The notes beneath the pieces were generated by a model that saw nothing but the letters and a program-made list of their open reading frames with translations, was not told where the DNA came from and did not search any database. DNA of 63,364 nucleotides, counting the filler, from Guillardia theta CCMP2712 (taxonomy: Eukaryota > Protista > Cryptophyta): the NCBI RefSeq assembly GCF_000315625.1. It is 6 parts of 6 records of this genome, joined end to end, with 100 filler letters (N's around TTAATTAATTAA, not from the genome) between each part and the next. Parts side by side here need not be neighbours in the genome. Positions count along the whole stretch, not along the records: positions 38,631 to 50,888 come from NW_005434398.1; 5 more parts are not named here. One strand, 5' to 3'. How positions within the stretch are numbered: the first letter of the stretch is position 1; every line of letters begins with the position of its first letter. The position numbers and the translations under genes are program-made. Below, piece by piece: positions 3,448-48,330 of this stretch.

Positions 3448-6400
3448 TGGCTGCTACTGTGACGCCTCCTGGGTGGTCAATGCGCACGCACGGCCTTGGA
3501 TGGCTGGCCATATGCGAGGGCGGGTATTACAGCGAGATCGGCAAGCAGGGAGACGGTTGCAACATCTGCCCCTACGACTTCTACTGCGCGGGGTACTACA
3601 GTATCGAGCCCTGCCCCAACGGCACCTACTCCAAGCAGGGCATTTCGCGTGTGGAGGAGTGTGCGTGCAAGCCCTCAACCTATCTCCTACCCAACGGTGT
3701 ATGTGATGTCTGCCCGGAGCGTTACTACTGCGCGGGGAGCCTCGACCCTGCCATGCCCTGTCCGAATCACTCCTGGTCATTCAATAGTTCGTCGAGCATC
3801 ATGAGCTGCGTCTGCGAGTATGGGTACTCCGGCCCTGGGAACACCCAGTGTGAGCCCTGTCCTCCTGGGACCTACAAGGACACGAGGAGCATGGCGGCGT
3901 GCACGGCCTGTCCCACGGACACCTACCAACCCAACACCGTGGCCACTAACATAAGCGAGTGCCTCCGGTGCCCCTTGCATTCGGTCTCACAACCCTCCAC
4001 GGGTTCGATTGGTGGGTGCCTCTGCATCCCAGGTTATTACAGGGAGGGAGACGCTTGCTCAGCGTGCCCGAAGGGTTTTTACACCGACCAGTACAACCTC
4101 GCGGCATGCATCGAGTGCGGCCCGAACCAGTACTCGCTGGTCATCGCCGCCAACACGTCGGAGGTCTGCACCTCCTGCCCCGGGAACAGCACCCGCTACA
4201 GCGTCTCCCCGGCTTCGGAGCCAGCATGGATGGGGGTAGGCTATCATGCGATGCGTGCCCGATGGGTCAGTACAAGGCGGGTCCCGGGAATTACAGCTGT
4301 ACCACCTGCCCCGAGAACACATACGCAGACGCCCTTGCCAGCACGGGATGCTCCTCCTGCCCGCTGAACTCGATATCGACATCCGGATCCAGCTCGGAGT
4401 CGTACTGCAGATGCATCCCCGGCTACGAGAAGAGGTGCGACGGTGAGCATCGAGGGATGCCTATGCTACCGTGGCTACGAGAGGGTGGGAGAGAGGTGCG
4501 ATGCCTGCCCTCCGGGCAAGTTCAAGGCGAGAGACGGGAGCACGGAGGCATGCCAGGATTGCCCAACCGGGTACTTCCAACCCCTCTCGGGCCAGGCCCA
4601 GTGCCTCCCATGCTCCGCCGTGGGCCTGTACACCACCACGGTGGGTCCTGGCACCGCCTCTCCTTCAGAATGTCTCTGTATCGATGGTTATGGCCTGCAG
4701 TCCTACGACGAGGCCGCACAGGTAAAGGTGTGCCGCCCATGCACCAGCAGTGGCTTCAAGCGGGGCGTCAACGACGATGCATGCACCGTGTGCCCGACGA
4801 CAGACAGCATCGCAAAGCACTACTACATCATCGGTGACCAATGCGTGATCGCCTGTGACTTTGGTTTCGTGCAGGATGACACCAGCGGCAGCTGCCAACC
4901 CAGTGCCGCCGATCTCACCCCATTGGCTTACGATCTGTCGTTTCGGAATATCCATGCGGACCATCTGCTAGACAGCCTGCAGGGTGAGATGAGGGTGCAA
5001 TACACCCCGGGTGCAAGCCTCCCGATCCTCTACGTCATAGGAAGTCCCTTCGAGTGTGGGGAATGCTGCATGCCCCTCATCAGCGAGGGCTACATGGGAG
5101 ATAGCATGCAATCGGTCGCACTCGGCTGTGGATGGGAGAACCACACCTCCAATTGCACCTGTGAGGAGTGGGACCTGGCCGTCCAGGATCGCATCATCCC
5201 CTATGAGACAGACAGTTACGGTTTCATGGACATCTCACCCACCGTGGGTGGGTACAACCCCTTCTCGCTCTATGTCAACCGGTTTCCCCGTGCATTGAAC
5301 TGCACACCATGGGGACAGTCCTCACTGAACTGCTCCTTCTACCTCGCCGCCTCGTTCCTCAGCCTGAACCCGGAGTTCAGCCTCGGATACAGCAGCGTGT
5401 TCCACAAATTCTCCTTCAGCAAGACTGTCGCCGGTACGTTCTCCGTCTTCGAGAGGGTGAGATCAGATATGATGAACCATTTATCGATGTCCGTCTACCA
5501 CTTCGACCAGAGCTCTGTGGTGGGGGTGAGATTCATGTTCTCTGGCCCGGAGGCGCTCCTCACCCGGCCTCAGGCCATGACCTTCAAGCTGAGCATGGGC
5601 GGCGTGGATGTGCTCGCTGAATCCCAGGTCTGCCATCACCTCGCCGCGATCCCGGGCCCGCACTGCTGGAAGGGCAACGGTTGGCTAGAGGGAGAGGTGC
5701 TCATCCATTCCGGGAGCGACTGCCGAGGCCTGCAGACATGGCCATCTGCAAAGTCAATGTGGATCTTCCTGGAGCTCCCAACCATGGCCTTTGACAGCAT
5801 CAGGGTGACGCTCCTCCTCTCCAACACGGAACCCATCTATACCTTCACGGGCGCCGGGGTGACAAGCCTGCATGGCTTCCTCAGGGCGTGCCCCGCGGTC
5901 TTCAGCGCCTACGACACTCGGACACTCAACGCCAGCGTAAGAGAGGGGCTCAATGGGACATGGGAGGAGTACAGCTCTTGGATGAGGGTGGGAGGGATAT
6001 CCATCCAGTCCTCCGTGCTGCAGATCGCCCTCGGCATGCCTGGGATATCACAGGTAGAGATCGTCATGGTCCACGTCATTGGCAACGCGCTAGCCGGCCT
6101 CATAGACAACCTCGTTCAGGACAACCGCATGTTCGACTACCAAGGCACGCGCCATCTCATCCTGAGCAGGGCGTTCCAGACCATCTGCTTCGCTGACAAC
6201 CCCATGAACTGCATCCCGAGGACTACCACCGTGGGCCTCCGAGGCTCATCGATGTCCTCCGCCTGGCCGACGACGACGCGCTCTGCGAGGAGGGAATGCG
6301 GTCGTGGCTACAGGACATCGCCAAGGTGCAGCCCTCCACGAGTCTATGGGCGGCGTCCAAGGCCTGCATGGGGAGGATCACCTCGGAGCAGAGCCATTTC

Positions 6401-38586: not shown

Positions 38587-38759
38587 NNNNNNNNNNNNNN
38601 NNNNNNNNNNNNNNNNNNNNNNNNNNNNNNACTCCCAGCGACCTCTACCATATCATCAGGCCTTACTGCAGGAGAGTGGACATGGACCGGCTCCGGCACG
38701 GCCATTTGTCTTACACATAATCTATGAAATACCTACGGAGTGGCTCCTAGACTCCTTCA

Positions 38760-40092
38760 TGGCCGGGGGCCTGATCTCTCCGGGCGGCCGTGACCGGTCA
38801 GCGGACCGTGTCAGCAGGCCCGTGACATGTCAGCCGGCTGACAGGGGCCGTGACCCGGCTGACAGGCTCACCTGACCGGTCACGTGACACATCACGTGAC
38901 CGAGACAAGACTTTTTTATATCGCAGATCCAAAAACCCATAGGACATTTCTCCCAGGGGGAAGAAAACCTCCCTTGACCCCCCTGTTTCTCGACGGATCC
39001 TGCCGGCCGGGCCCGTCAGTAGACCGACTGCAGCCTTCAGCCCCGCCTCAGACCCCCTGGAGGCCCGCCAGGAGGCTAAGTGTCCGGAGATTGGCCGGGG
39101 GCCTGATCTCTCCGGGCGGCCGTGACCGGTCAGCGGACCGTGTCAGCAGGCCCGTGACATGTCAGCCGGCTGACAGGGGCCGTGACCCGGCTGACAGGCT
39201 CACTGACCGGTCACGTGACACATCACGTGACCGAGACAAGACTTTTTTATATCGCAGATCCAAAAACCCATAGGACATTTCTCCCAGGGGGAAGAAAACC
39301 TCCCTTGACCCCCCTGTTTCTCGACGGATCCTGCCGGCCGGGCCCGTCAGTAGACCGACTGCAGCCTTCAGCCCCGCCTCAGACCCCCTGGAGGCCCGCC
39401 AGGAGGCTAAGTGTCCGGAGATTGGCCGGGGGCCTGATCTCTCCGGGCGGCCGTGACCGGTCAGCGGACCGTGTCAGCAGGCCCGTGACATGTCAGCCGG
39501 CTGACAGGGGCCGTGACCCGGCTGACAGGCTCACCTGACCGGTCACGTGACACATCACGTGACCGAGACAAGACTTTTTTATATCGCAGATCCAAAAACC
39601 CATAGGACATTTCTCCCAGGGGGAAGAAAACCTCCCTTGACCCCCCTGTTTCTCGACGGATCCTGCCGGCCGGGCCCGTCAGTAGACCGACTGCAGCCTT
39701 CAGCCCCGCCTCAGACCCCCTGGAGGCCCGCCAGGAGGCGGAGTGTCCGGAGATTGGCCGGGGGCCTGATCTCTCCGGGCGGCCGTGACCGGTCAGCGGA
39801 CCGTGTCAGCAGGCCCGTGACATGTCAGCCGGCTGACAGGGGCCGTGACCCGGCTGACAGGCTCACCTGACCGGTCACGTGACACATCACGTGACCGAGA
39901 CAAGACTTTTTTATATCGCAGATCCAAAAACCCATAGGACATTTCTCCCAGGGGGAAGAAAACCTCCCTTGACCCCCCTGTTTCTCGACGGATCCTGCCG
40001 GCCGGGCCCGTCAGTAGACCGACTGCAGCCTTCAGCCCCGCCTCAGACCCCCTGGAGGCCCGCCAGGAGGCGGAGTGTCCGGAGATTGGCCG
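38760..40092. repeat. Tandem array of a 332-bp unit, left block (4 near-identical copies)
   Basis: GGCCG recurs at 38761, 39093, 39424, 39756 and 40088 (spacing 332/331/332/332). The unit is rich in TGAC/GTCA palindromes and CACGTG boxes. Confidence 0.97.
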
Positions 40093-40119
40093 CATTCCAT
40101 TGGGTTCTCAACTGGATTT
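40093..40119 (+). repeat. Left terminal inverted repeat CATTCCATTGGGTTCTCAACTGGATTT
   Basis: Reverse complement of 50232-50258 (26/27). Confidence 0.95.
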
Positions 40120-41164
40120 TATTCCGTCTCGGCGGGGTCTTTTTCTACCTGGATTTTTCTTAATGAATAGGTTTTGGATTTCAAAGTGAAAATTTTCCTT
40201 GAAATGTTTTACTTCTGTCAAACCACGCCATTTCAAATTGTGGGATCCTGCCAGCACCGTGCCATTTCTGGAATTTTTAAACGTTGTACAGAATGTACCA
40301 ATGTTGTACACTGTGTTAGTTTGGGAGACTCACGTTCAAGCAGATCGCGCCCTGTGGGCACCATGTTGTGAGATACATACATCAATGTGATGACAAGAAC
40401 ATCTTTTGATGCCAAATTTGACCAGATTTGAATGTATCATGTGGGAAAACGACTGCATTTCCTTTAAGCAGAGTGTTTTGAGGATGATGCATATCATGTT
40501 GCAATAAGAATTTTGTGGAAAGGAAATATTTGAATCTCAGTTCGTTGAGTTGCGTGTAAATGCAAATATGCTTTGAAGCATTGTGAGCATAGTTGTAACT
40601 GTGCATTGACTTGTAATAGTGTAAGGTATGCATTCAAATTTGCATGCTCACGCTATCCAATAATTGTGTGACTTTCCTTGTCATACTTGCACTGAAACAC
40701 CTCAATTCTGATGTGCCAAAGCCCTGATCAGCTGTTTTCACACTTTCAGAAGGGAAACATGAAAGGAATCGATCAGAGAGGCAACCTTCGAAGACATAAA
40801 GGAAATGCGATTCTCCTTATTGCGATGACGGCCTAGCTTCCTGTACCAGAATGCTTCGTCGGTTGTATATGAAACATATTTCAAGAGACTTGCTGGTGCT
40901 TTGCCATGATTGCATTTTTTGAGGCTTCTCCCAATGCATTCCACAACAGTTTGAGTCTTGTGAAATGCTCTCAACAGCCAGTGGGATGGCGATTATAACA
41001 TGTCATTGGAGTTTGTGAGGCACTGAGAGGGAGGAGAGAGGAGGGGACAGGGGAGGTGGGAAGGAGATGGGAGAGTAGGGGTTGGAAGGGAAAGAGAAGC
41101 CTGGGAGGTCACTGCGATGATATGCTGATCGCGAGAGACTGGGAGATGCCAGAGGAGAGACGGT

Positions 41165-43153
41165 TTACTCAAGACCACTAGCGAGGAAGGGATGCTTCAG
41201 AGCCTCCTCTGCAGTCATCCTCGTGCGGGGATCGATGTCGAGGCAGCGGTTGAGGAAGTCCCAGATCGCATGTTTCTCCTCCACCTCCAGCCAGCCCTTG
41301 CATCCCGCATCCTCGCTCAGGGCGCTTGATAAGGTCCGCCATGTTTGCTCCAAACCGCGGGCATAGCTCAGATACTGTTCCAATGGTCCGAACTGAATGA
41401 CATGAAGTTAGCATCCCCAGCTTAAGAGTCCCGCCACCATATCACCCTCATCCTCATCCTCATCCTCATCCTCATCCTCATCCTCATCCTCATCCTCATG
41501 ATACAACAACAGCAGCAACAACGACAACAATTTTACTTCAACGTCGAGCTTGAAATCTTCGATGACATCTCTGATCTTATCCCTGTACTGACCCGTATAC
41601 CCATAGTTGTGCTGGAACTCAGCGTCCATGCTCTTGATGTACATGCGCAAGCTGTTCAGACCATACAGTCAGACCAGCGCACTTACTTCAAGGCTTACAC
41701 AACGGGCGTACCCGTAGATCTCCATGACCGCCAAGTTGTCATTGTCATGCCGGAACCACTGGAAGCAGTGTGTCTGCCGGCACAGCAGGGTAAGCAGTAT
41801 CACCCCAGCGCTCCAGACGTCCACTGCTGTCGTCTGGTGGTGGCTGCCCATGAGCACTTCGGGCGCGCGGTACCCCCGGGTTCCCCCGCGGTTGACTGGA
41901 AGCCGTTTCAGTTTGACCCCTGAGTTCCTCACGGTCTCCGATGCGTTCGTCCTTCTGACGCCCAACCTTCGCCTCTTTGCAATCTGCTGCGCCAGGTTCT
42001 CAGAGGGCAAGATGTAGCCGTTGCTCTTCGTGGCAGGGAAATACTTGCTCATTGACCCTGACGTTGTTCTGCGGCCTGGTGAAGGCGTTTGTCCTGTGGA
42101 AATTCCCAGAGCAGTCTTCTGCATTTTCTTCTCTGCCAGCCCAAAGTCCACAAGCAAGTACTTCTTGTTCCTTCTGTCGTAGAGGAAGTTATTCAATTTC
42201 ACGTCTCGATGTATGATCCCGAGGGCATGTACAGACCTCATTGCTACAAACAAATTCTTCATGTAGTGGGTAATCTCTTTGATGGTCAAATCTTTGACGT
42301 AATCTGAGGGACTGTCATGTTCGAAGTATTCAAAAATCAAAGCCTGCTGCTCCTCGACAATGATTATCCCATTGGGCGCCAGTGGCGGACTTTGCACACG
42401 CTGTACAATGTTGGATTTTCCATGCAAGCTTGATATAAAGTTTGCTTCCTTCTTATGCGCATCCATAGTTTGAAATGGTAATAATCGTTTGATTGCTACT
42501 CGGCGATCATTTAACCTGTCGTAGGCCTCATAGACCTCCCCGAAAGTCCCCGAGCCAACCATTCTTGTTAAATCAAACTGCTTTTCTACTTCATTGAGAA
42601 ACCGCATGTCCACTGGGTAGATCATCAGCTCTTCTCGTATTGAAATTTTCTTGTGTGCAGCCTCTTGATACACAATGTTATCAGCACTCCGACTTCTGCG
42701 CTTGCGGTTTCGCAGAGTTTCCATACTTGCCGATCGTTCTTCCTCTGTTTCGCGGGCCCTCTGCCTCCTCTCCGATTGTCTCCTTCGTTGGCTTGCTAAC
42801 TGCGCAGATCGTTCTTCCTCTGTTTCGCGGGCCCTCCTCTCCGATTCTCTCATTCGTTGGCTTGCTAACCGCGCAGATCGTTCTTCCTCTGTTTCGCGGG
42901 CCCTCCTCTCCGATTCTCTCATTCGTTGGCTTGCTAACCGCGCAGATCGTTCTTCCTCTGTTTCGCGGGCCCTCCTCTCCGATTGTCTCCTTCGTTGGCT
43001 TGCTAACCGCGCAGATCGTTCTTCCTCTGTTTCCCGTTCCCTCCTCTCCCGTTTTCTTCTTCGATTGACCTCCAACTGCGCAGATCGTTCTTCGTCTGTT
43101 TTCTGCCAATGCATTGTTTTGTTGGGATAAGCAGAACATACACCCCCTGGCAA
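41165..43153 (-). CDS. CDC7: Cdc7 (DDK catalytic subunit)-like Ser/Thr kinase with N-terminal 23-aa STPR-like repeats; spliced 3' exons
   Basis: GSGTFGEVY, VAIK, HRDVKLNNFL, LVDFGLA, a long insert, then RGGTRGYRAPEVL..HQTTAVDVWSAGVILL (Cdc7-type). Further exons at ~41540-41652 and 41165-~41374 end RCLDIDPRTRMTAEEALKHPF. Confidence 0.85.
42720..43105 (-). repeat. 69-bp coding tandem repeat (~5.5 x ETEEERSARLASQRxRxSERRAR)
   Basis: GATCGTTCTTCCTCTGTTTC recurs mostly at 69-bp spacing. The 23-residue period and ETxExRxxRL consensus fit STPR repeats. Confidence 0.9.
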
Positions 43154-43182
43154 ATTTCAAAGTGCTCCCAAATATTTGGGAT

Positions 43183-44499
43183 ATGTCAAATCAGATCGTT
43201 ACATTTTGTAATCAGACGCAATGGGTTTGGCAAAACAGGCATAAATTATTCACGGCGGTGTTGACGGGCCTTGGCGCTGTTGACGGGCACATGTCGCGCC
43301 AACGATCAGCTGCGTTGAGAGGCATCGAGACCAGAAGAAATGGAGATAGAATGTCCTCCATTGAAAACATTGACTTTCAAGATGTACCACCTTCCATTTT
43401 GCATGAACCCCTGATCTTGGAGATTCAAAGTTCCCTCCTATCTCAACCTCAGAGTTCGATTGAAGCTCGATGGACAAATAGCACCCTGGGCTTACGGGTT
43501 CTTTTAACTCCTGGTTGTGGAATCCGCTATCATGAAGATGATCCTGCAAGAACCACAAGGTACGGTATAATCAAACGTTTGGTTTCCGATTGCAGGGTGG
43601 AGATTTTCATGTTGTATGACAAGAATGTCATACAACAGATTTTCATGTTGTATGACAAGAATGTCATACAACATGTTGTATGACTTTTGGACAAAGTTGA
43701 TGCAAATATTTCAAAGCATGGCTTACAAAACAAGTCCATGAGGCAGATTGTGAGGTCGATGAATGCGAGAACATGCTTCCAATCAGTGTACACGGAAGAA
43801 GTGGACCTGGACCTGATTCAGGATGTGCTAACTATTCAGTATCCATTCCTTCTTGATTCTATGTCGTCTCAAGCACCGCAATCAAGGATTATCGATGTTG
43901 TAGGGTACATTTTCTTCAATGAAGACAACTACAATCGTCGAAAGCCCTATTGTGAGATTTCGTACTTCAAATTGCAAGACCCTGAACAAACAATTAAGAA
44001 GATAGTATCTTCCAGCATCGAAGCTTCAGTGCTCACACCATCCGGTTACCTCAAGACAGTCTCAGACATCGAAGAGATTAAGAACAGCATGCAGCTATGG
44101 CTCACAGCCAGGAGTCGTACATTCAAGAAAGCAGGCACACAAGATCTTGACTTTACTTGCAAGAATATTTCAATGAGGAGTTTGCTTCGTTTAATTCCAC
44201 CTCGTCTTTTCAAACATGTCAAGGCGAAGAGGAACAAATCACAATTCACATGGATATTTGCAGAGAACATCGTTCAAGATAAAGCTTTCAGAGAAGTGTT
44301 AGATATCCCTTTCAAGTCGACACCGAAGCTTCAAGAAAATCTGACACAAATGTTTGTGGGCGGACCGATGTATTTGTCGTACAAACGGGGGAATATGTCC
44401 GTGGGTTTTGAAACAGTCGGTAGCATTGGTGGCATGATGGGCAAGATCCAATGGGTTGATTGGCGAGACAAGAAAAAGAGGCAACAGAGAGTGTTATAA
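43183..44499 (+). pseudogene. Transposon cargo ORF with BAH-like domain, split by an in-frame TGA (43681-43683)
   Basis: ORFs 43114-43683 and 43687-44499 share a frame. LTPGCGIRY...RYGIIKRL...VEIFMLY...TCFQSVYTEEVDLDLIQDVLTI resembles the BAH strand pattern. Start uncertain. Confidence 0.5.
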
Positions 44500-44510
44500 A
44501 TCATGGGCAA

Positions 44511-47192
44511 CTAAGAGTAGTACAAATTTACAATCGTTCCTAATCCTGACGTTAGCAAATTTCTGAATGCAAAAAAATTGCTCATATTCCTAGACATTTG
44601 CTGCAGAGTCGCTGTATCTACATGATCCTCGGTCATGTTTTCATGAGATCGTTTTCTACCTGCTGCTGCATTGCCTTCCATCAATCCTTTTCTCCAAGCA
44701 GGTCGTCCGCAAATTCTGTGCCTTAGTTCCAAACTTGACATGCTCAGAGCACCCAAAGTAACGTTTCGTTCTGAAAGATGATAGTGGAATAATTCTGCGA
44801 CATGTCCGGCAGATAAAAAGTGAAAATACACAGCACTGAAGAGTTCCTTATCGCCGCATTCTACGACGTATCTGATAACGAATGAATTGATCCTCGTCGC
44901 TAATGTACCAATGTCTTCATCGGTAAGATGGGAAACATGCGTACATGACAATGTCGAAAGTACGGATGACAACTCTTTGTAGATCTCAGTGTATCTATTT
45001 CGCTCATCAACATCATCATAAAGGAGGTCGAGTAGGGGTCCCATAGCTCGGTTCAACAAATCGTCGCACTGTTTGCCTGTCAAGTTAGGAAGCTTCCCAT
45101 TGCTTTCTTCCAACTTATACTTGATTCCAGACTTGTGTAAAATGCTTTGAGCTTGTTTAGTTCGGTGCTTTCGTTGAGCTGTTTTGTATACACACTTGAG
45201 GACACAGTATACAATCCGCAATTTGAGATGGAGAACACAAATGACAAGGCTTTTGCAATCAAGTCCATGTTCTTTCAAAACCTCATGTTCTCTTTCCATT
45301 CCGTGATCCTGCTTCAGTACGACCACCTTCTGCCCACGTTTCAGTGTCTTGCTCCTTTTTGACACATTCAGCTTAGACACGTCTGCCTTGCTCAAACATT
45401 TTCCACCGAACATGCATTGATGTACGATACTGCATTGCCCTCCATTGGTTAGCACTTCGTGAACCAACCAGAACACATCTGCTGGAATCGCTCTTTCCTT
45501 GCAGAAATCATCGACAGTGATGTCCTCAGGAACCTCCGCGATATCGAAGATGAGATGACGCTCAGCTGATTTTACATGGCAGTACAAGCAGCATTGATCT
45601 CCCTTGGCACCTATGCGAAAATGACGTTTAGAAAGGACACTGAGGCAACCATGCTATCAGCAATTACCTTTCATGCCGACAAGATGCCACAAGCCCTTGA
45701 GGTCGCCACGAAATTCAATTGAGAGGGGAATGATGAGCTCAGGATGAGCAGCAGGGTCACTCATGGACCGTTTGCGACCATCGATGCACGTCAAATTTCC
45801 ATTGTCGTCCCTGTAAAAATGCAGCCCAGCAGCTATCTTCCTTCCATCCGCACAGATCAGTTCGCCTAAGAATGCCTTCAAGTCAAGTCCATATTCATCC
45901 CAAAGATTTGCCTTGATATTTTCAATTGAATCTTGCAAATAGATCAGTAAAAATGTGACATACGATGCAGGAGAATTTAATCTTGTTTCTTGATCGAAAA
46001 AACAGTCTGCAAACTGCACGGCATCATCCCAGACTCCAATCAAATTCATTGCAAAGTCTGTATGCTCTGTTCCTGACTGAGCTGAACAGCCTAGTCGGAC
46101 GCTATCGAAGCAGGTGGACAACTTCAATCCTTTGACCGACATCAATTCTGGTGTCGACTGCACAAGCTTCATGAAAAACAGTTCCGTCACTTTGATAAGA
46201 TTTGCTCCATGGCCCCCAGGAAGCTCGACTATTCCATCAACCTTTTCTTCTACTAATCTTTTTTGCTTGGCCTTCGTCCTGCTGATTTCCGTAGGACTGT
46301 GCATAACTTGAAGCCCACTTTCCTTCATCATTTTGTGAAGATCGTCCAACGCCTTGTGAGTCAGTCCATTTTGCAAAGTCATAAGAGAAAGCTCGTCTAT
46401 TCTCGCACAAACAGAGTTGTACATTTTTTGCAACGCTTTCTTTATCCTCTTGTTGGTCTTGGCATGCTTTTTCAAATGAAAAGATGCAGATTGTGCAAAA
46501 CCATTCATAAACGACTCCAGGTGAAACAGTGAATCGGAACTTTGACGTAGATCACTGAGATGGCCGAAAGCTTTGCCACTTCCATTCAAGCCTGTCATGC
46601 GTTGCAGACCTCCAGAGAGCAAATTGGAGGTGGGAGTTATTTCAGCAAGAATGTCCTTGAGAATTCTTAGCTTTTTGTCTGCAGAATCATTGGAAATGTC
46701 TTCCAGATTTGCCGGGCATATCTCCTGAGGGAAATTTGCTTTCCAAATGTCCTCAAATGTCAAATTTAGAACCTTGTCAATGTTGGGAATTGCATCTTTC
46801 ATGCGCTGATGCTCACTTTTGAGTTTTTCATATTCTGCACTCAAGTGTGCCAACCGACTCGCGCAATTGAAGTAGCCTTGCAGAGTACTTCCAACAACAG
46901 ACGATGGCGAAAAAAGATATCCGTTTGCAACGTAGTACAAGAAAGAAGCAACATCAGGCTTATCAGAAGTTTTCTCCATGAAGCCTTCCAGCAATGCAAA
47001 ATGTTCAAGTCCCCTCCAGGTAGCTTCATCGTAGTTGACACGACGATAAGGTGTTGGATTCAAGCCTTGTAGGAATGCCATCGTGTAGCTGTCCATACTT
47101 CGAACAGGATAAGCTTGAACAATTCGCTGCATGTCGTAGCCATCCAAAGGGCGGCGGTAACAACATGGATGAAAAGGATTGAAATCTTCCAC
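44511..47192 (-). CDS. RAG1/Transib-like DDE transposase (>=874 aa; 57-bp intron at 45667..45611; 5' end runs toward the N gap)
   Basis: Splicing GTAATT...GCATAG joins FRGDLKGLWHLVGMK-GAKGDQCCLYC. Motifs in RAG1 order: STCFDS (D, 46104-6), RGDLK (D, 45702-4), CxxC, ICVLHLKLRI, YFHFLSAGHV, LGALSMSSLE (E, 44727-9). Confidence 0.88.
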
Positions 47193-47937
47193 ACGACATC
47201 CGCACTGCTACACATATAGAGAATACCAGAAAANNNNNNNNNNNNNNNNNNNNNNNNNNNNNNNNNNNNNNNNNNNNNNNNNNNNNNNNNNNNNNNNNNN
47301 NNNNNNNNNNNNNNNNNNNNNNNNNNNNNNNNNCCGGGAAAACTACTATTTGTTGCTAATGATTCCGCAATTTGATTGAACATTTCAGCTTAGTCTCGAC
47401 TTCACAGTTCGAGTATGAAATTTTAGAACAAATGTTGAGCCCTTGACATGGAATATTTCCACACATGGTAGAGAATAATTGCACAGGTTGTAATATAGTA
47501 GGGATATAACCCCCACCCCTGAACACCGTGGAAAACTACCCCTACCTACACTTTATACCGATTTATCATGATATTTGGTAGGGTAGGCCAGAGTGAATGG
47601 GTAGGTACTACGTTTTGTGTTTGAGGTTTGATCAGAAAAGGGGCTGTGTTCCCACTACCTACCCCCTTCTCATATGATAATAAGCGCACCCCACGTTCAA
47701 CTTATGTTTTTGGGGGTGTTGCTGGATGGTCGTAGGGTTTCACTGACTCTGCAGGGGTAGTGAGCAAAACAAAAAACTGTGTTTTGCTCACGCAGACAAA
47801 CACACATACAGAAGAGACAAACAAACAAACGAACAGCGACAGACAAACACACATACACAGAACAGACAGACAAACAGACATACAGAAGAGACAAACAAAC
47901 AAACGAACAGTTCAGGCAAATAAACAAACATACCCTT

Positions 47938-48330
47938 CAAATTTGAAATTATGCCCAAATATTTCGGATATGTCAAATCAGATCCTTACATTTTGTAATC
48001 AGACGCAATGGGTCGGGCACGCATGTCGCGCCAACGATGATGTTTTCCTGGGGTTGCAATACGCATAAGCTCACGATCAGCTGCGTTGAGAGGCATCGAG
48101 ACCAGAAGAAATGGAGATAGAATGTCCTCCATTGAAAACATTGACTTTCAAGATGTACCACCTTCCATTTTGCATGAACCCCTGATCTTGGAGATTCAAA
48201 GTTCCCTCCTATCTCAACCTCAGAGTTCGATTGAAGCTCGATGGACAAATAGCACCCTGGGCTTACGGGTTCTTTTAACTCCTGGTTGTGGAATCCGCTA
48301 TCATGAAGATGATCCTGCAAGAACCACAAG
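47938..48330. repeat. Internal direct duplication of 43151-43560 within the transposon
   Basis: 48073-48330 is essentially identical to 43302-43560, and 47938-48013 is a diverged copy of 43151-43226. Confidence 0.9.

What the first reader, a model, noticed from the sequence alone, without database searches (positions are those of the whole stretch)
44511..47192. Transposase keeps the RAG1 catalytic and zinc-binding motif set, hidden by a 57-bp intron
Seen: the ORF track shows two unrelated-looking ORFs, but removing GTAATTG...CGCATAG (45667..45611) gives GDLKGLWHLVGMKGAKGDQCCLYC in frame. Known: the mouse RAG1 core uses D600/D708/E962, the C727/C730 + H937/H942 zinc site and the DxLH motif. 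Their apparent equivalents occur here in order: CFDS, GDLK, CLYC, CVLH, YFHxxxxH, SSLE. No stops or frameshifts remain after splicing. Inference: a possibly active RAG1-like recombinase far outside animals.
Basis: partly seen in the sequence, partly recalled or inferred. Interest (0 to 1): 0.85.

Follow-up and report, generated by a model that had tools for sequence, protein, structure and literature searches.

The report
RAG1-fold transposase in a cryptophyte transposon
This is an intact, spliced and transcribed transposase gene in the alga Guillardia theta; its predicted fold matches RAG1/Transib best, but it belongs to a small, undescribed cryptophyte transposon lineage with its own end sequences, no target-site duplication and a conserved partner gene.

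Summary
**Observation: confirmed.** Removing 45667..45611 (57 nt, GT..AG) joins the two minus-strand ORFs in frame. Contigs from three sequencing studies and the public model GUITHDRAFT_149260 use the same splice. The protein is 854 aa.

**The RAG1 reading holds at fold level only.**
- An AlphaFold model of the core (pLDDT 84) matches RAG1, BbRAG1L and HzTransib best among solved structures: Z 17.8-18.8, against P element 12 and Hermes 7.
- Protein-language-model features also point to RAG1/Transib clusters.
- HMMER finds no sequence match to RAG1, HzTransib or the Pfam RAG1 models.
- The D, D, CxxC, HxnH, E motif set is shared by the whole CACTA-Mirage-Chapaev-Transib clade, not just RAG1.

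**The gene sits in a real transposon.**
- It lies in a 10.2-kb element (40093..50258) with 27-nt TIRs starting 5'-CAT.
- The element is inserted in a satellite repeat with no target-site duplication.
- Three related cryptophyte elements carry the same tail-to-tail partner gene (ORF2). One has related TIRs; another shows a clean empty site, again with no duplication.

**Verdict.** This is a new cryptophyte lineage of the CMC-Transib supergroup, probably active or recently active. It is not a canonical Transib.

The parts
40093..50258 (.). Whole TIR-bounded element (10,166 bp) inserted in a 332-bp satellite array
   Evidence: 27-nt inverted termini. The satellite unit is split G|element|GGGG, while 10 intact units read GGCC-GGGGG-CCTG, so there is no target-site duplication.
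40093..40119 (+). Left TIR, CATTCCATTGGGTTCTCAACTGGATTT
   Evidence: A related 29-nt TIR (CATTCCGTTCC...CTGGAATTT) bounds the paralogous element at L006:8655-13757.
50232..50258 (-). Right TIR, matching the left TIR at 26 of 27 positions
45668..47132 (-). Transposase exon 1 (ATG 47132..47130; residues 1-488 plus the first base of codon 489)
   Evidence: An in-frame TAG lies upstream of the ORF start.
45611..45667 (-). 57-nt GT..AG intron, phase 1
   Evidence: Skipped in contigs of runs X1, X5 and X7 from three studies. Used in the public model P0001. Its position is conserved in L006.
44511..45610 (-). Transposase exon 2, ending with stop 44513..44511
   Evidence: Transcript contigs run unspliced through 44546..44659. 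The L006 and L001-type proteins keep this C-terminal segment, so the second intron of the deposited model is not supported.
46104..46106 (-). Codon of D343 (CFDS), proposed first catalytic Asp, at the end of the model's first long beta strand (56-64)
   Evidence: Invariant in all 10 family sequences that cover it. Model strand 56-64 ends at this residue.
45702..45704 (-). Codon of D477 (FRGDLKGLW), proposed second catalytic Asp
   Evidence: Invariant in all 9 sequences that cover it. It lies directly after model strand 191-197.
45579..45590 (-). C496-x-x-C499, proposed zinc ligands
Evidence: C(2)C is invariant in alignment A4.
45228..45239 (-). C613-V-L-H616, the C/D(2)H motif
   Evidence: Conserved in 13 of 13 family sequences.
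44802..44822 (-). H752-x5-H758 (YFHFLSAGH), proposed second half of the zinc site
   Evidence: H-x5-H is present in all 11 family sequences that span both histidines. The gap is one residue longer than the H(3-4)H of known lineages.
44727..44729 (-). Codon of E783 (SSLE), proposed catalytic Glu, on model helix 501-510
   Evidence: Invariant in alignment A5. Model secondary structure.
43291..44499 (+). ORF2, the conserved partner gene, tail-to-tail with the transposase. In this assembly it is broken by an in-frame stop at 43681..43683
   Evidence: Homologous to the convergent gene beside three other family transposases. It is a single 424-aa ORF in the GenBank copy L008. dN/dS is 0.19 in the L001/L002 pair.
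43151..43560 (+). Repeat R, covering the 5' part of ORF2
47938..48331 (+). Repeat R', a second copy of R upstream of the transposase gene (89-100% identical)
47234..47333 (.). Assembly gap (100 N)
   Evidence: Window 47209..47333 (25 bases plus the 100 N) is replaced by 51 nt in the GenBank copy L008 and in a contig of run X5.
41165..43153 (-). Protein kinase gene inside the TIRs (possible passenger)
   Evidence: Pfam Pkinase, E 1.2e-34.

Best explanation
The gene encodes the transposase of an autonomous cut-and-paste DNA transposon of Guillardia theta. The transposon belongs to a small, cryptophyte-restricted and so far unnamed lineage of the CMC-Transib (CMCT) supergroup, the group that also gave rise to RAG1.

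**Shown**
- The 854-aa reading frame is intact, and the 57-nt intron is spliced.
- The predicted core fold matches RAG1/Transib best among solved structures.
- D343, D477, C496/C499, C613xxH616, H752/H758 and E783 are conserved in the family.
- The element has 27-nt TIRs with 5'-CA..TG-3' ends.
- The insertion is precise, with no target-site duplication.
- A second gene (ORF2), convergent with the transposase, is conserved in the four elements I examined.
- Sister copies are recently mobile and under purifying selection.

**Inferred**
- The transposase binds the TIRs.
- D343/D477/E783 hold two metal ions in an RNase H-like site.
- The element is cut out through a nick followed by a hairpin on the flanking DNA, as in RAG, Transib and hAT enzymes.
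- C496/C499 and H752/H758 form the structural zinc site that ties the inserted domain to the catalytic domain, as in RAG1.
- The two strand transfers hit opposed phosphates, or nearly so, which would explain the missing duplication.
- ORF2 is an accessory factor, perhaps a chromatin reader.
For: **Organism and family**
- The best hit is GUITHDRAFT_149260, 100% identical over the queried exon 1.
- Only 19 relatives turn up among 1.84 billion representative proteins. All named ones are from Guillardia or Hanusia.

**Splice**
-.

**Fold and affinity**
- AlphaFold model with an 18-sequence alignment: pLDDT 84, pTM 0.84.
- Foldseek against the PDB: ranks 1-49 are RAG1, BbRAG1L or HzTransib, with best E 3.6e-9. 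The next hit, P element transposase, has E 0.33.
- VIA-align: RAG1 Z 18.8 (397 residues aligned, rmsd 4.2); HzTransib and BbRAG1L Z 17.8; P element 12.0; Hermes 7.3.
- Language-model features: RAG1 clusters and arthropod/cnidarian clusters partly carrying PF26100 score 0.95-0.96.
- Residue conservation.
- The D477 to CxxC spacing is +19/+22, the same as D708 to C727/C730 in RAG1.

**Mobility**
- The window element splits a satellite unit with no duplicated base.
- The L001 element (4,612 bp) has a paralogous empty site at L001:5742/5743 with no duplication. It is 95% identical to copies with different flanks in other assemblies. Two of those copies are 99.87% identical to each other.
- The L006 element has TIRs related to those in the window.
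- dN/dS is 0.26 for the transposase and 0.19 for ORF2.
- The 5'-CA..TG-3' termini fit the CMCT clade (PMC12730594).
Against: - No significant sequence match to RAG1/HzTransib chains or to any Pfam transposase model, even with family profiles.
- Among predicted structures, a plant CACTA cluster and unnamed fungal, rotifer and plant clusters tie with RAG1 (TM 0.58-0.65). The position inside the supergroup is therefore open.
- The histidine pair is H(5)H, not H(3-4)H.
- A 0-bp duplication lies outside the 2-5 bp reported for the clade.
- Only one copy of this particular element is known, so its own mobility is not shown.
- True RNA reads were very few: 8 reads from 6% of one run. The three runs with the spliced contigs are only guessed to be RNA.
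- The active-site superposition was not measured.
- AlphaFold was trained on RAG1 structures.
Confidence: 0.8

Rival explanations
1. It is a genuine member of the Transib superfamily in the strict sense, and so a direct relative of the RAG1 ancestor living in a cryptophyte.
For: - The best solved-structure matches are RAG1, BbRAG1L and HzTransib.
- Language-model neighbours are RAG1 and Transib-like clusters, and no CACTA cluster is listed.
- The D-to-CxxC spacing equals that of RAG1.
- Recent work shows that duplication length and TIR ends vary inside Transib (bioRxiv 10.64898/2026.08.26.747230).
Against: - No HMMER similarity to RAG1/HzTransib or to the Pfam RAG1 domain models.
- No CAC heptamer-like terminus and no 5-bp duplication.
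- The PDB holds no CMC structure, so the PDB ranking cannot separate Transib from CMC.
- A CACTA cluster ties with RAG1 in the predicted-structure search.
Confidence: 0.25
2. It is a divergent member of CMC proper (EnSpm/CACTA, Mirage or Chapaev type), and the RAG1 likeness only reflects the architecture common to the supergroup.
For: - A plant cluster with Transposase_21 has the highest TM by query (0.65, 421 residues aligned) in the predicted-structure search. Clusters partly carrying DUF1280 also appear.
- The motif set is common to the whole clade.
- CACTA-type elements commonly carry a second gene (my own knowledge).
Against: - No Pfam Transposase_21 match.
- No CACTA terminus and no 2-4 bp duplication.
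- The language-model search lists RAG1 families, not CACTA.
- ORF2 is convergent, not co-oriented with the transposase.
Confidence: 0.2
3. It is a domesticated or immobile host gene, or a dead relic, rather than a working transposase.
For: - A single copy of this element in the assembly.
- It carries a kinase gene and an internal duplication.
- ORF2 has a stop codon in this assembly.
- RNA read depth is very low.
Against: - Near-perfect TIRs and a precise insertion in a satellite.
- The ORF2 stop is absent from the GenBank copy and from transcript contigs.
- All proposed catalytic residues are kept.
- Sister elements show recent transposition and purifying selection.
Confidence: 0.07
4. The RAG1 match is an artefact: either AlphaFold recalled a trained fold from a few motifs, or the protein belongs to another DDE superfamily such as P or hAT.
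For: - The single-sequence model was useless (pLDDT 38).
- The alignment has only 18 rows.
- P element transposase still reaches Z 12.
Against: - The confident model arose only once the family alignment was supplied, and no templates were used.
- RAG1/Transib stand about 6 Z units above the P element and 11 above Hermes, over about 397 residues spanning all subdomains.
- An independent sequence-feature method gives the same family.
Confidence: 0.03

Closest known systems
Transib transposases (HzTransib) and RAG1 / RAG1-like (BbRAG1L of ProtoRAG)
   Same: - Predicted core architecture. The model aligns to mouse RAG1 497-1004 and HzTransib 59-478 at Z about 18.
- Order of D, D, C(2)C, C/D(2)H, HxnH and E.
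- D-to-CxxC spacing of +19/+22.
- 5'-CA..TG-3' element ends.
- A convergent second gene, as in the RAG1-RAG2 pair of vertebrates and ProtoRAG (that layout is from my own knowledge).
   Different: - No detectable sequence similarity by HMMER.
- H(5)H instead of H(4)H.
- Larger D-D and D-E spacing (134 and 306 residues, against 108 and 254 in RAG1 numbering).
- TIRs start CATTCC or CATATTGG, with no CAC heptamer or nonamer layout.
- 0-bp instead of 5-bp duplication.
- The partner protein shows no sign of a RAG2 kelch propeller. It may carry a BAH-like domain.
- A 279-residue N-terminal region was left unmodelled.
CMC superfamily (EnSpm/CACTA, Mirage, Chapaev) and other CMCT lineages (Plavaka, ESTA, Lanisha)
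   Same: - Shared DDE plus C(2)C plus HxnH motif set, and CA..TG termini (PMC12730594).
- A plant CACTA cluster is as close in predicted structure (TM 0.65).
- PlavakaB ends (CATCA..TGATG) also start with CAT.
   Different: - No Pfam Transposase_21 match.
- No CACTA terminus.
- These lineages make 2-5 bp duplications, whereas here there is none.
- The family is known only from cryptophytes.
Spy elements (PIF/Harbinger relatives that insert without target-site duplication)
   Same: DDE-type TIR elements that insert precisely with a 0-bp duplication (mentioned in PMC12730594).
   Different: Unrelated transposase superfamily (PHIS), with different ends and target.

Membership tests
Transib superfamily (strict sense) | Significant sequence similarity of the transposase core to Transib/RAG1 | tested here: not met
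   phmmer and hmmsearch against all PDB chains, which include RAG1, BbRAG1L and HzTransib, give no hit at E up to 10. The Pfam scans were run at E up to 1 or 0.1 and returned no RAG1-family model; atlas clusters carry PF26100/PF26101/PF26104, which I take to be in that Pfam copy. HHsearch was not available.
Transib superfamily (strict sense) | RAG1/Transib-type fold (pre-RNase H, RNase H, ZnC2, ZnH2, C-terminal domain) | tested here: met
   Foldseek ranks 1-49 are RAG1/BbRAG1L/HzTransib. VIA Z is 17.8-18.8 over about 375-400 residues. A CACTA cluster ties among predicted structures, so the fold does not separate Transib from CMC.
Transib superfamily (strict sense) | 5-bp target-site duplication | tested here: not met
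   0 bp at the window insertion, judged against 10 intact satellite units, and at L001:9483-14094, judged against the empty site at 5742/5743.
Transib superfamily (strict sense) | TIR beginning with a CAC(A/G)(A/G)TG-like heptamer (RSS-like) | tested here: not met
   The termini are CATTCCATTGGG (window), CATTCCGTTCC (L006) and CATATTGGTC (L001).
CMCT clade (CACTA/EnSpm-Mirage-Chapaev-Transib and allies) | [quoted passage not shown] | tested here: inconclusive
   D343, D477, C496xxC499 and E783 are conserved, but the histidine pair is H(5)H in every member that covers it.
CMCT clade (CACTA/EnSpm-Mirage-Chapaev-Transib and allies) | 5'-CA..TG-3' termini | tested here: met
   All three elements with defined ends start CAT and end ATG.
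CMCT clade (CACTA/EnSpm-Mirage-Chapaev-Transib and allies) | 2-5 bp target-site duplication | tested here: not met
   0 bp in the two insertions where the empty site is known. Two other copies have matching dinucleotides on both sides (CG, GT), which may be chance.
EnSpm/CACTA | Transposase_21 (PF02992) domain, CACTA termini, 3-bp duplication | tested here: not met
   No Pfam hit. Termini and duplication as above.
RAG1 catalytic mechanism | D/D/E and the Cys2-His2 ligands superpose on D600/D708/E962 and C727/C730/H937/H942 | not testable with these tools
   Model coordinates and residue-level structural alignments were not available. Only indirect support exists: D343 ends the first long beta strand, D477 follows a strand, E783 lies on a helix, and the D-to-CxxC spacing is identical.
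RAG1-RAG2 type two-gene transposon (ProtoRAG-like) | Partner gene encoding a RAG2-like kelch propeller | tested here: inconclusive
   A convergent partner gene is conserved. It has no Pfam or PDB sequence match. Language-model features point to BAH domains (0.92), not kelch.

The most novel reading that the evidence does not exclude
A protist two-gene transposon in which a RAG1-fold transposase works with a convergently encoded chromatin-reading partner (BAH-like ORF2) and integrates without a target-site duplication. This would be a deep-branching or independent counterpart of the RAG1-RAG2 arrangement, outside animals and fungi. It would offer a new system for asking how RAG-type enzymes acquired accessory subunits and how strand-transfer spacing is set.
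Probability: 0.2. Interest if true: 0.8.

Novelty: new variant of a known kind. Interest (0 to 1): 0.6.

Why it matters
- RAG1 arose from a Transib-type transposase, so relatives far from animals help to date and root that enzyme architecture.
- The proteins of this family are all annotated as hypothetical. They have no Pfam model and only 19 relatives among 1.84 billion representative proteins. The family nevertheless shows a confident RAG1-type fold.
- It combines that fold with three unusual traits: insertion without a target-site duplication, its own TIR type, and a conserved tail-to-tail partner gene.
- If the element is active, it could give a compact system for studying how RAG-like enzymes recognise ends, choose targets and use accessory proteins. 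It might also serve as a genetic tool for cryptophytes.
- A RAG1-like motif set outside animals is not surprising in itself, because plant CACTA transposases share it.

Tried and rejected
**Searches that found nothing**
- Pfam scans of both exons, of P0001 and of P0002.
- phmmer of each exon, and family profiles A1, A4 and A5, against PDB sequences: no RAG1 hit.
- Language-model search with exon 1 alone: no usable hit.
- The word-indexed homologue search found only P0001 and P0002, even with a profile.
- Literature searches for Transib, EnSpm or CACTA together with Guillardia or cryptophyte found no description of this family.

**Steps that failed or were unavailable**
- The single-sequence AlphaFold model was useless (pLDDT 38).
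- Yuan & Wessler 2011 is not held in the library.

**Ideas rejected**
- TIRs close to the gene: none between 43000 and 48600.
- A kinase shared between the window element and the L006 locus: tblastn found no match.
- ORF2 against Pfam and the PDB, as whole proteins and as the N-terminal part alone: nothing.
- The second intron of the deposited gene model (44659..44546) is rejected. Transcript contigs keep it, and homologues conserve the encoded segment.

**Not done**
- Profile-profile comparison or a tree with Transib, CMC and RAG1 reference sequences. No tool could deliver those sequences, and I did not type them from memory.
Full report
**1. What the sequence is**

The piece 38631..50888 is nuclear DNA of the cryptophyte alga Guillardia theta. 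Exon 1 of the candidate gene matches GUITHDRAFT_149260 (P0001, 816 aa) at 100% identity. The same locus in the GenBank assembly (JH993271.1, fetched as L008) is 99.7% identical over the transposase/ORF2 stretch. The window is therefore another assembly or haplotype of that locus.

**2. The observation**

- The two minus-strand ORFs are there.
- Removing 45667..45611 (57 nt, GT..AG) gives a single open frame with the junction GMKG/AKGDQCCLYC and no other stop.
- Contigs from three runs in three different studies lack exactly these 57 nt. They are otherwise collinear with the genome from about 43.5 to 47.5 kb.
- The runs are only guessed to be RNA. Their size (35-44 Mb of contigs) and the clean loss of a GT..AG segment fit transcript assemblies.
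- The deposited model uses the same junction.
- A paralogous element has a 50-nt intron (GTAATT..CACAG) at the same codon position.
- An in-frame TAG lies just upstream of the ORF start. The protein therefore starts at ATG 47132 and has 854 residues, and it is not cut by the N gap.
- That gap is really 51 nt: window 47209..47333 (25 bases plus the 100 N) is replaced by 51 nt in L008 and in one run.
- The deposited model also removes 44659..44546 as a second, in-frame intron. This is not supported. Transcript contigs keep the segment, and homologues conserve the peptide it encodes.

**3. The family**

- An exhaustive phmmer search of 1.84 billion representative proteins finds only 19 relatives.
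- The named ones are G. theta paralogues and Hanusia phi transcripts. The rest are metagenome or Logan contigs.
- None has a Pfam domain or a functional name.
- The following are conserved in all, or nearly all, members that cover them: D343 (FDS/FDG/YDG), D477 (R-x-D-L/M-x-G-x-W), C496xxC499, C613xxH616, H752x5H758 and E783.

**4. Is it RAG1-like?**

By sequence statistics, no. Neither the protein, nor family profiles, nor profiles of the two motif blocks hit RAG1, BbRAG1L or HzTransib chains at E up to 10. No Pfam model matches either, at cut-offs of E 1 and 0.1.

By structure, yes.
- With the 18-sequence family alignment, AlphaFold2 gives a confident model of residues 280-816: pLDDT 84, pTM 0.84. 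The single sequence alone gave pLDDT 38.
- The first 49 Foldseek matches in the PDB are all RAG1, BbRAG1L or HzTransib, with best E 3.6e-9. The next family, P element transposase, has E 0.33.

| Solved structure | VIA-align Z |
|---|---|
| RAG1 | 18.8 (397 residues, rmsd 4.2; mouse RAG1 497-1004) |
| HzTransib | 17.8 |
| BbRAG1L | 17.8 |
| P element transposase | 12.0 |
| Hermes | 7.3 |

- An independent language-model search of the same core lists RAG1 clusters, and arthropod and cnidarian clusters that partly carry PF26100, at 0.95-0.96.
- D343 ends the model's first long beta strand (56-64), D477 follows a strand, and E783 sits on a helix. This is what an RNase H-like DDE site requires.
- The distance from D477 to the CxxC pair is +19/+22, exactly that of D708 to C727/C730 in RAG1.

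**5. Why the strict reading is not established**

- The motif set is not a RAG1 signature. [quoted passage not shown] Together these form the CMCT clade, which mostly has CA..TG ends and 2-5 bp duplications (PMC12730594).
- Kapitonov and Koonin place Chapaev inside the Transib group (PMC4411706).
- RepeatMasker files Transib under CMC.
- The PDB has no CMC structure. In the search of predicted structures, a plant Transposase_21 cluster (TM 0.65) and unnamed fungal, rotifer and plant clusters tie with RAG1 clusters (0.58-0.62).
- I could not run a profile-profile comparison or a tree, because no tool supplies reference sequences.
- I could not superpose the active sites, because model coordinates are not exposed.

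**6. The element**

*In the window*
- The gene lies in a 10,166-bp unit, 40093..50258.
- The unit is bounded by 27-nt TIRs, CATTCCATTGGGTTCTC(A/G)ACTGGATTT.
- It interrupts one unit of a 332-bp satellite. Ten intact units read GGCC-GGGGG-CCTG, and the interrupted one reads GGCCG|element|GGGGCCTG. No base is duplicated.

*The P0002 paralogue (L006)*
- It sits in a 5,103-bp element with related 29-nt TIRs, CATTCCGTTCC...CTGGAATTT.
- This ties that TIR type to this transposase subfamily.

*A more distant subfamily (P0021, 25% identity)*
- It forms a 4,612-bp element at L001:9483-14094, with ends CATATTGGTC...GACCGATATG.
- Its flanks are contiguous at a paralogous empty site (L001:5742/5743), again with no duplication.
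- Copies 95% identical to it occur with different flanks in other assemblies. Two of those copies are 99.87% identical to each other.
- dN/dS between the copies is 0.26 for the transposase and 0.19 for the partner gene.

The family is therefore mobile and under selection for function. It differs from Transib (CAC heptamer, 5 bp) and from CMC (2-4 bp) in both ends and duplication. Recent work shows that these traits also vary inside Transib.

**7. The partner gene**

- A second gene lies tail-to-tail with the transposase in the four elements I examined: window 43291..44499; L006:12361-13533; L003:3297-4598 and the other P0021-type copies (L001, L002, L004, L005); and L007:3102-4253.
- The stops are 11 bp apart in the window and overlap in L006.
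- Identities fall to 22-27%, but the tblastn E-values are 1e-9 to 1e-14.
- It has no Pfam or PDB sequence match.
- Language-model features of one member point to BAH-domain clusters: 0.92, with 194 shared features and 25 of 30 hits. The recognition score is low.
- I also see a W-F-Y-R-K and L-Q-S-x-Y-x-D-E-V pattern that reminds me of BAH domains. This is a lead, not a result.
- In this window ORF2 carries an in-frame stop (43681..43683) just after a 36-bp tandem duplication. The GenBank copy lacks 57 nt there and reads through as one 424-aa ORF. Contigs of two runs lack 21 nt there.

**8. Verdict**

This is a RAG1-fold DDE transposase, intact, spliced, conserved, and part of a transposon that looks active or recently active. 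Its membership of Transib in the strict sense failed three of four tests.

The best description is a new, cryptophyte-restricted lineage of the CMC-Transib supergroup, with 5'-CAT TIRs, no target-site duplication and a conserved convergent partner gene. I found no paper describing it. Repbase could not be checked.

Noticed in passing
window 43291..44499 (+); L006:12361-13533; L003:3297-4598; L007:3102-4253: A conserved gene (ORF2, about 350-430 aa; annotated GUITHDRAFT_122309, hypothetical) lies tail-to-tail with the transposase in the four elements examined. Language-model features suggest an N-terminal BAH-like domain, but Pfam and PDB sequence searches find nothing.
   Followed up: partly
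window 43601..43683: A 36-bp tandem duplication, followed by an in-frame stop, breaks ORF2 in this assembly. The GenBank copy (L008) lacks 57 nt here and reads through. Contigs of two runs lack 21 nt here.
   Followed up: yes
window 43151..43560 and 47938..48331: Direct repeats of about 400 bp (a 259-nt core is 100% identical), 4.77 kb apart, bracket the ORF2-transposase pair. The repeat contains the 5' part of ORF2, so a partial ORF2 copy sits upstream of the transposase gene. Its origin is unexplained; it could be an internal duplication or an assembly effect near the gap.
   Followed up: partly
window 41165..43153 (-): A protein kinase gene (Pfam Pkinase, E 1e-34) lies inside the TIRs. Its N-terminal region is built from 69-bp tandem repeats (42695..43108). 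It may be a captured passenger. The 5.1-kb sister element has no kinase inside, though one lies 573 bp outside its left TIR.
   Followed up: partly
window 38631..40092 and 50259..50888: A GC-rich 332-bp satellite array flanks the element on both sides in the same phase. It carries long spurious ORFs and an internal 30-nt inverted repeat.
   Followed up: partly
window 44546..44659 (-): The deposited gene model removes this 114-nt in-frame segment as a second intron. Transcript contigs keep it, and paralogues conserve the encoded peptide, so the public protein (816 aa) is probably 38 residues too short.
   Followed up: yes
window 47209..47333: The 100-N gap plus the 25 bases before it correspond to only 51 nt in the GenBank copy and in a contig of run X5.
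   Followed up: yes
window 47793..47935: A low-complexity (CAGACAAACA)n-like tract lies upstream of the transposase gene. It is 93% identical to the GenBank copy, with indels.
   Followed up: no
L009:6686-8990 and L010:8076-8951: Two further G. theta copies of the family. One has a transposase but no detectable ORF2 next to it and lies near a reverse-transcriptase gene. The other is only an N-terminal fragment beside housekeeping genes.
   Followed up: partly
window 45103 (P0001 residue 658): The window encodes Ser where the public protein has Asn. One run (X5, a differently labelled organism) carries the Asn allele and nine other base differences, which suggests strain-level polymorphism.
   Followed up: no
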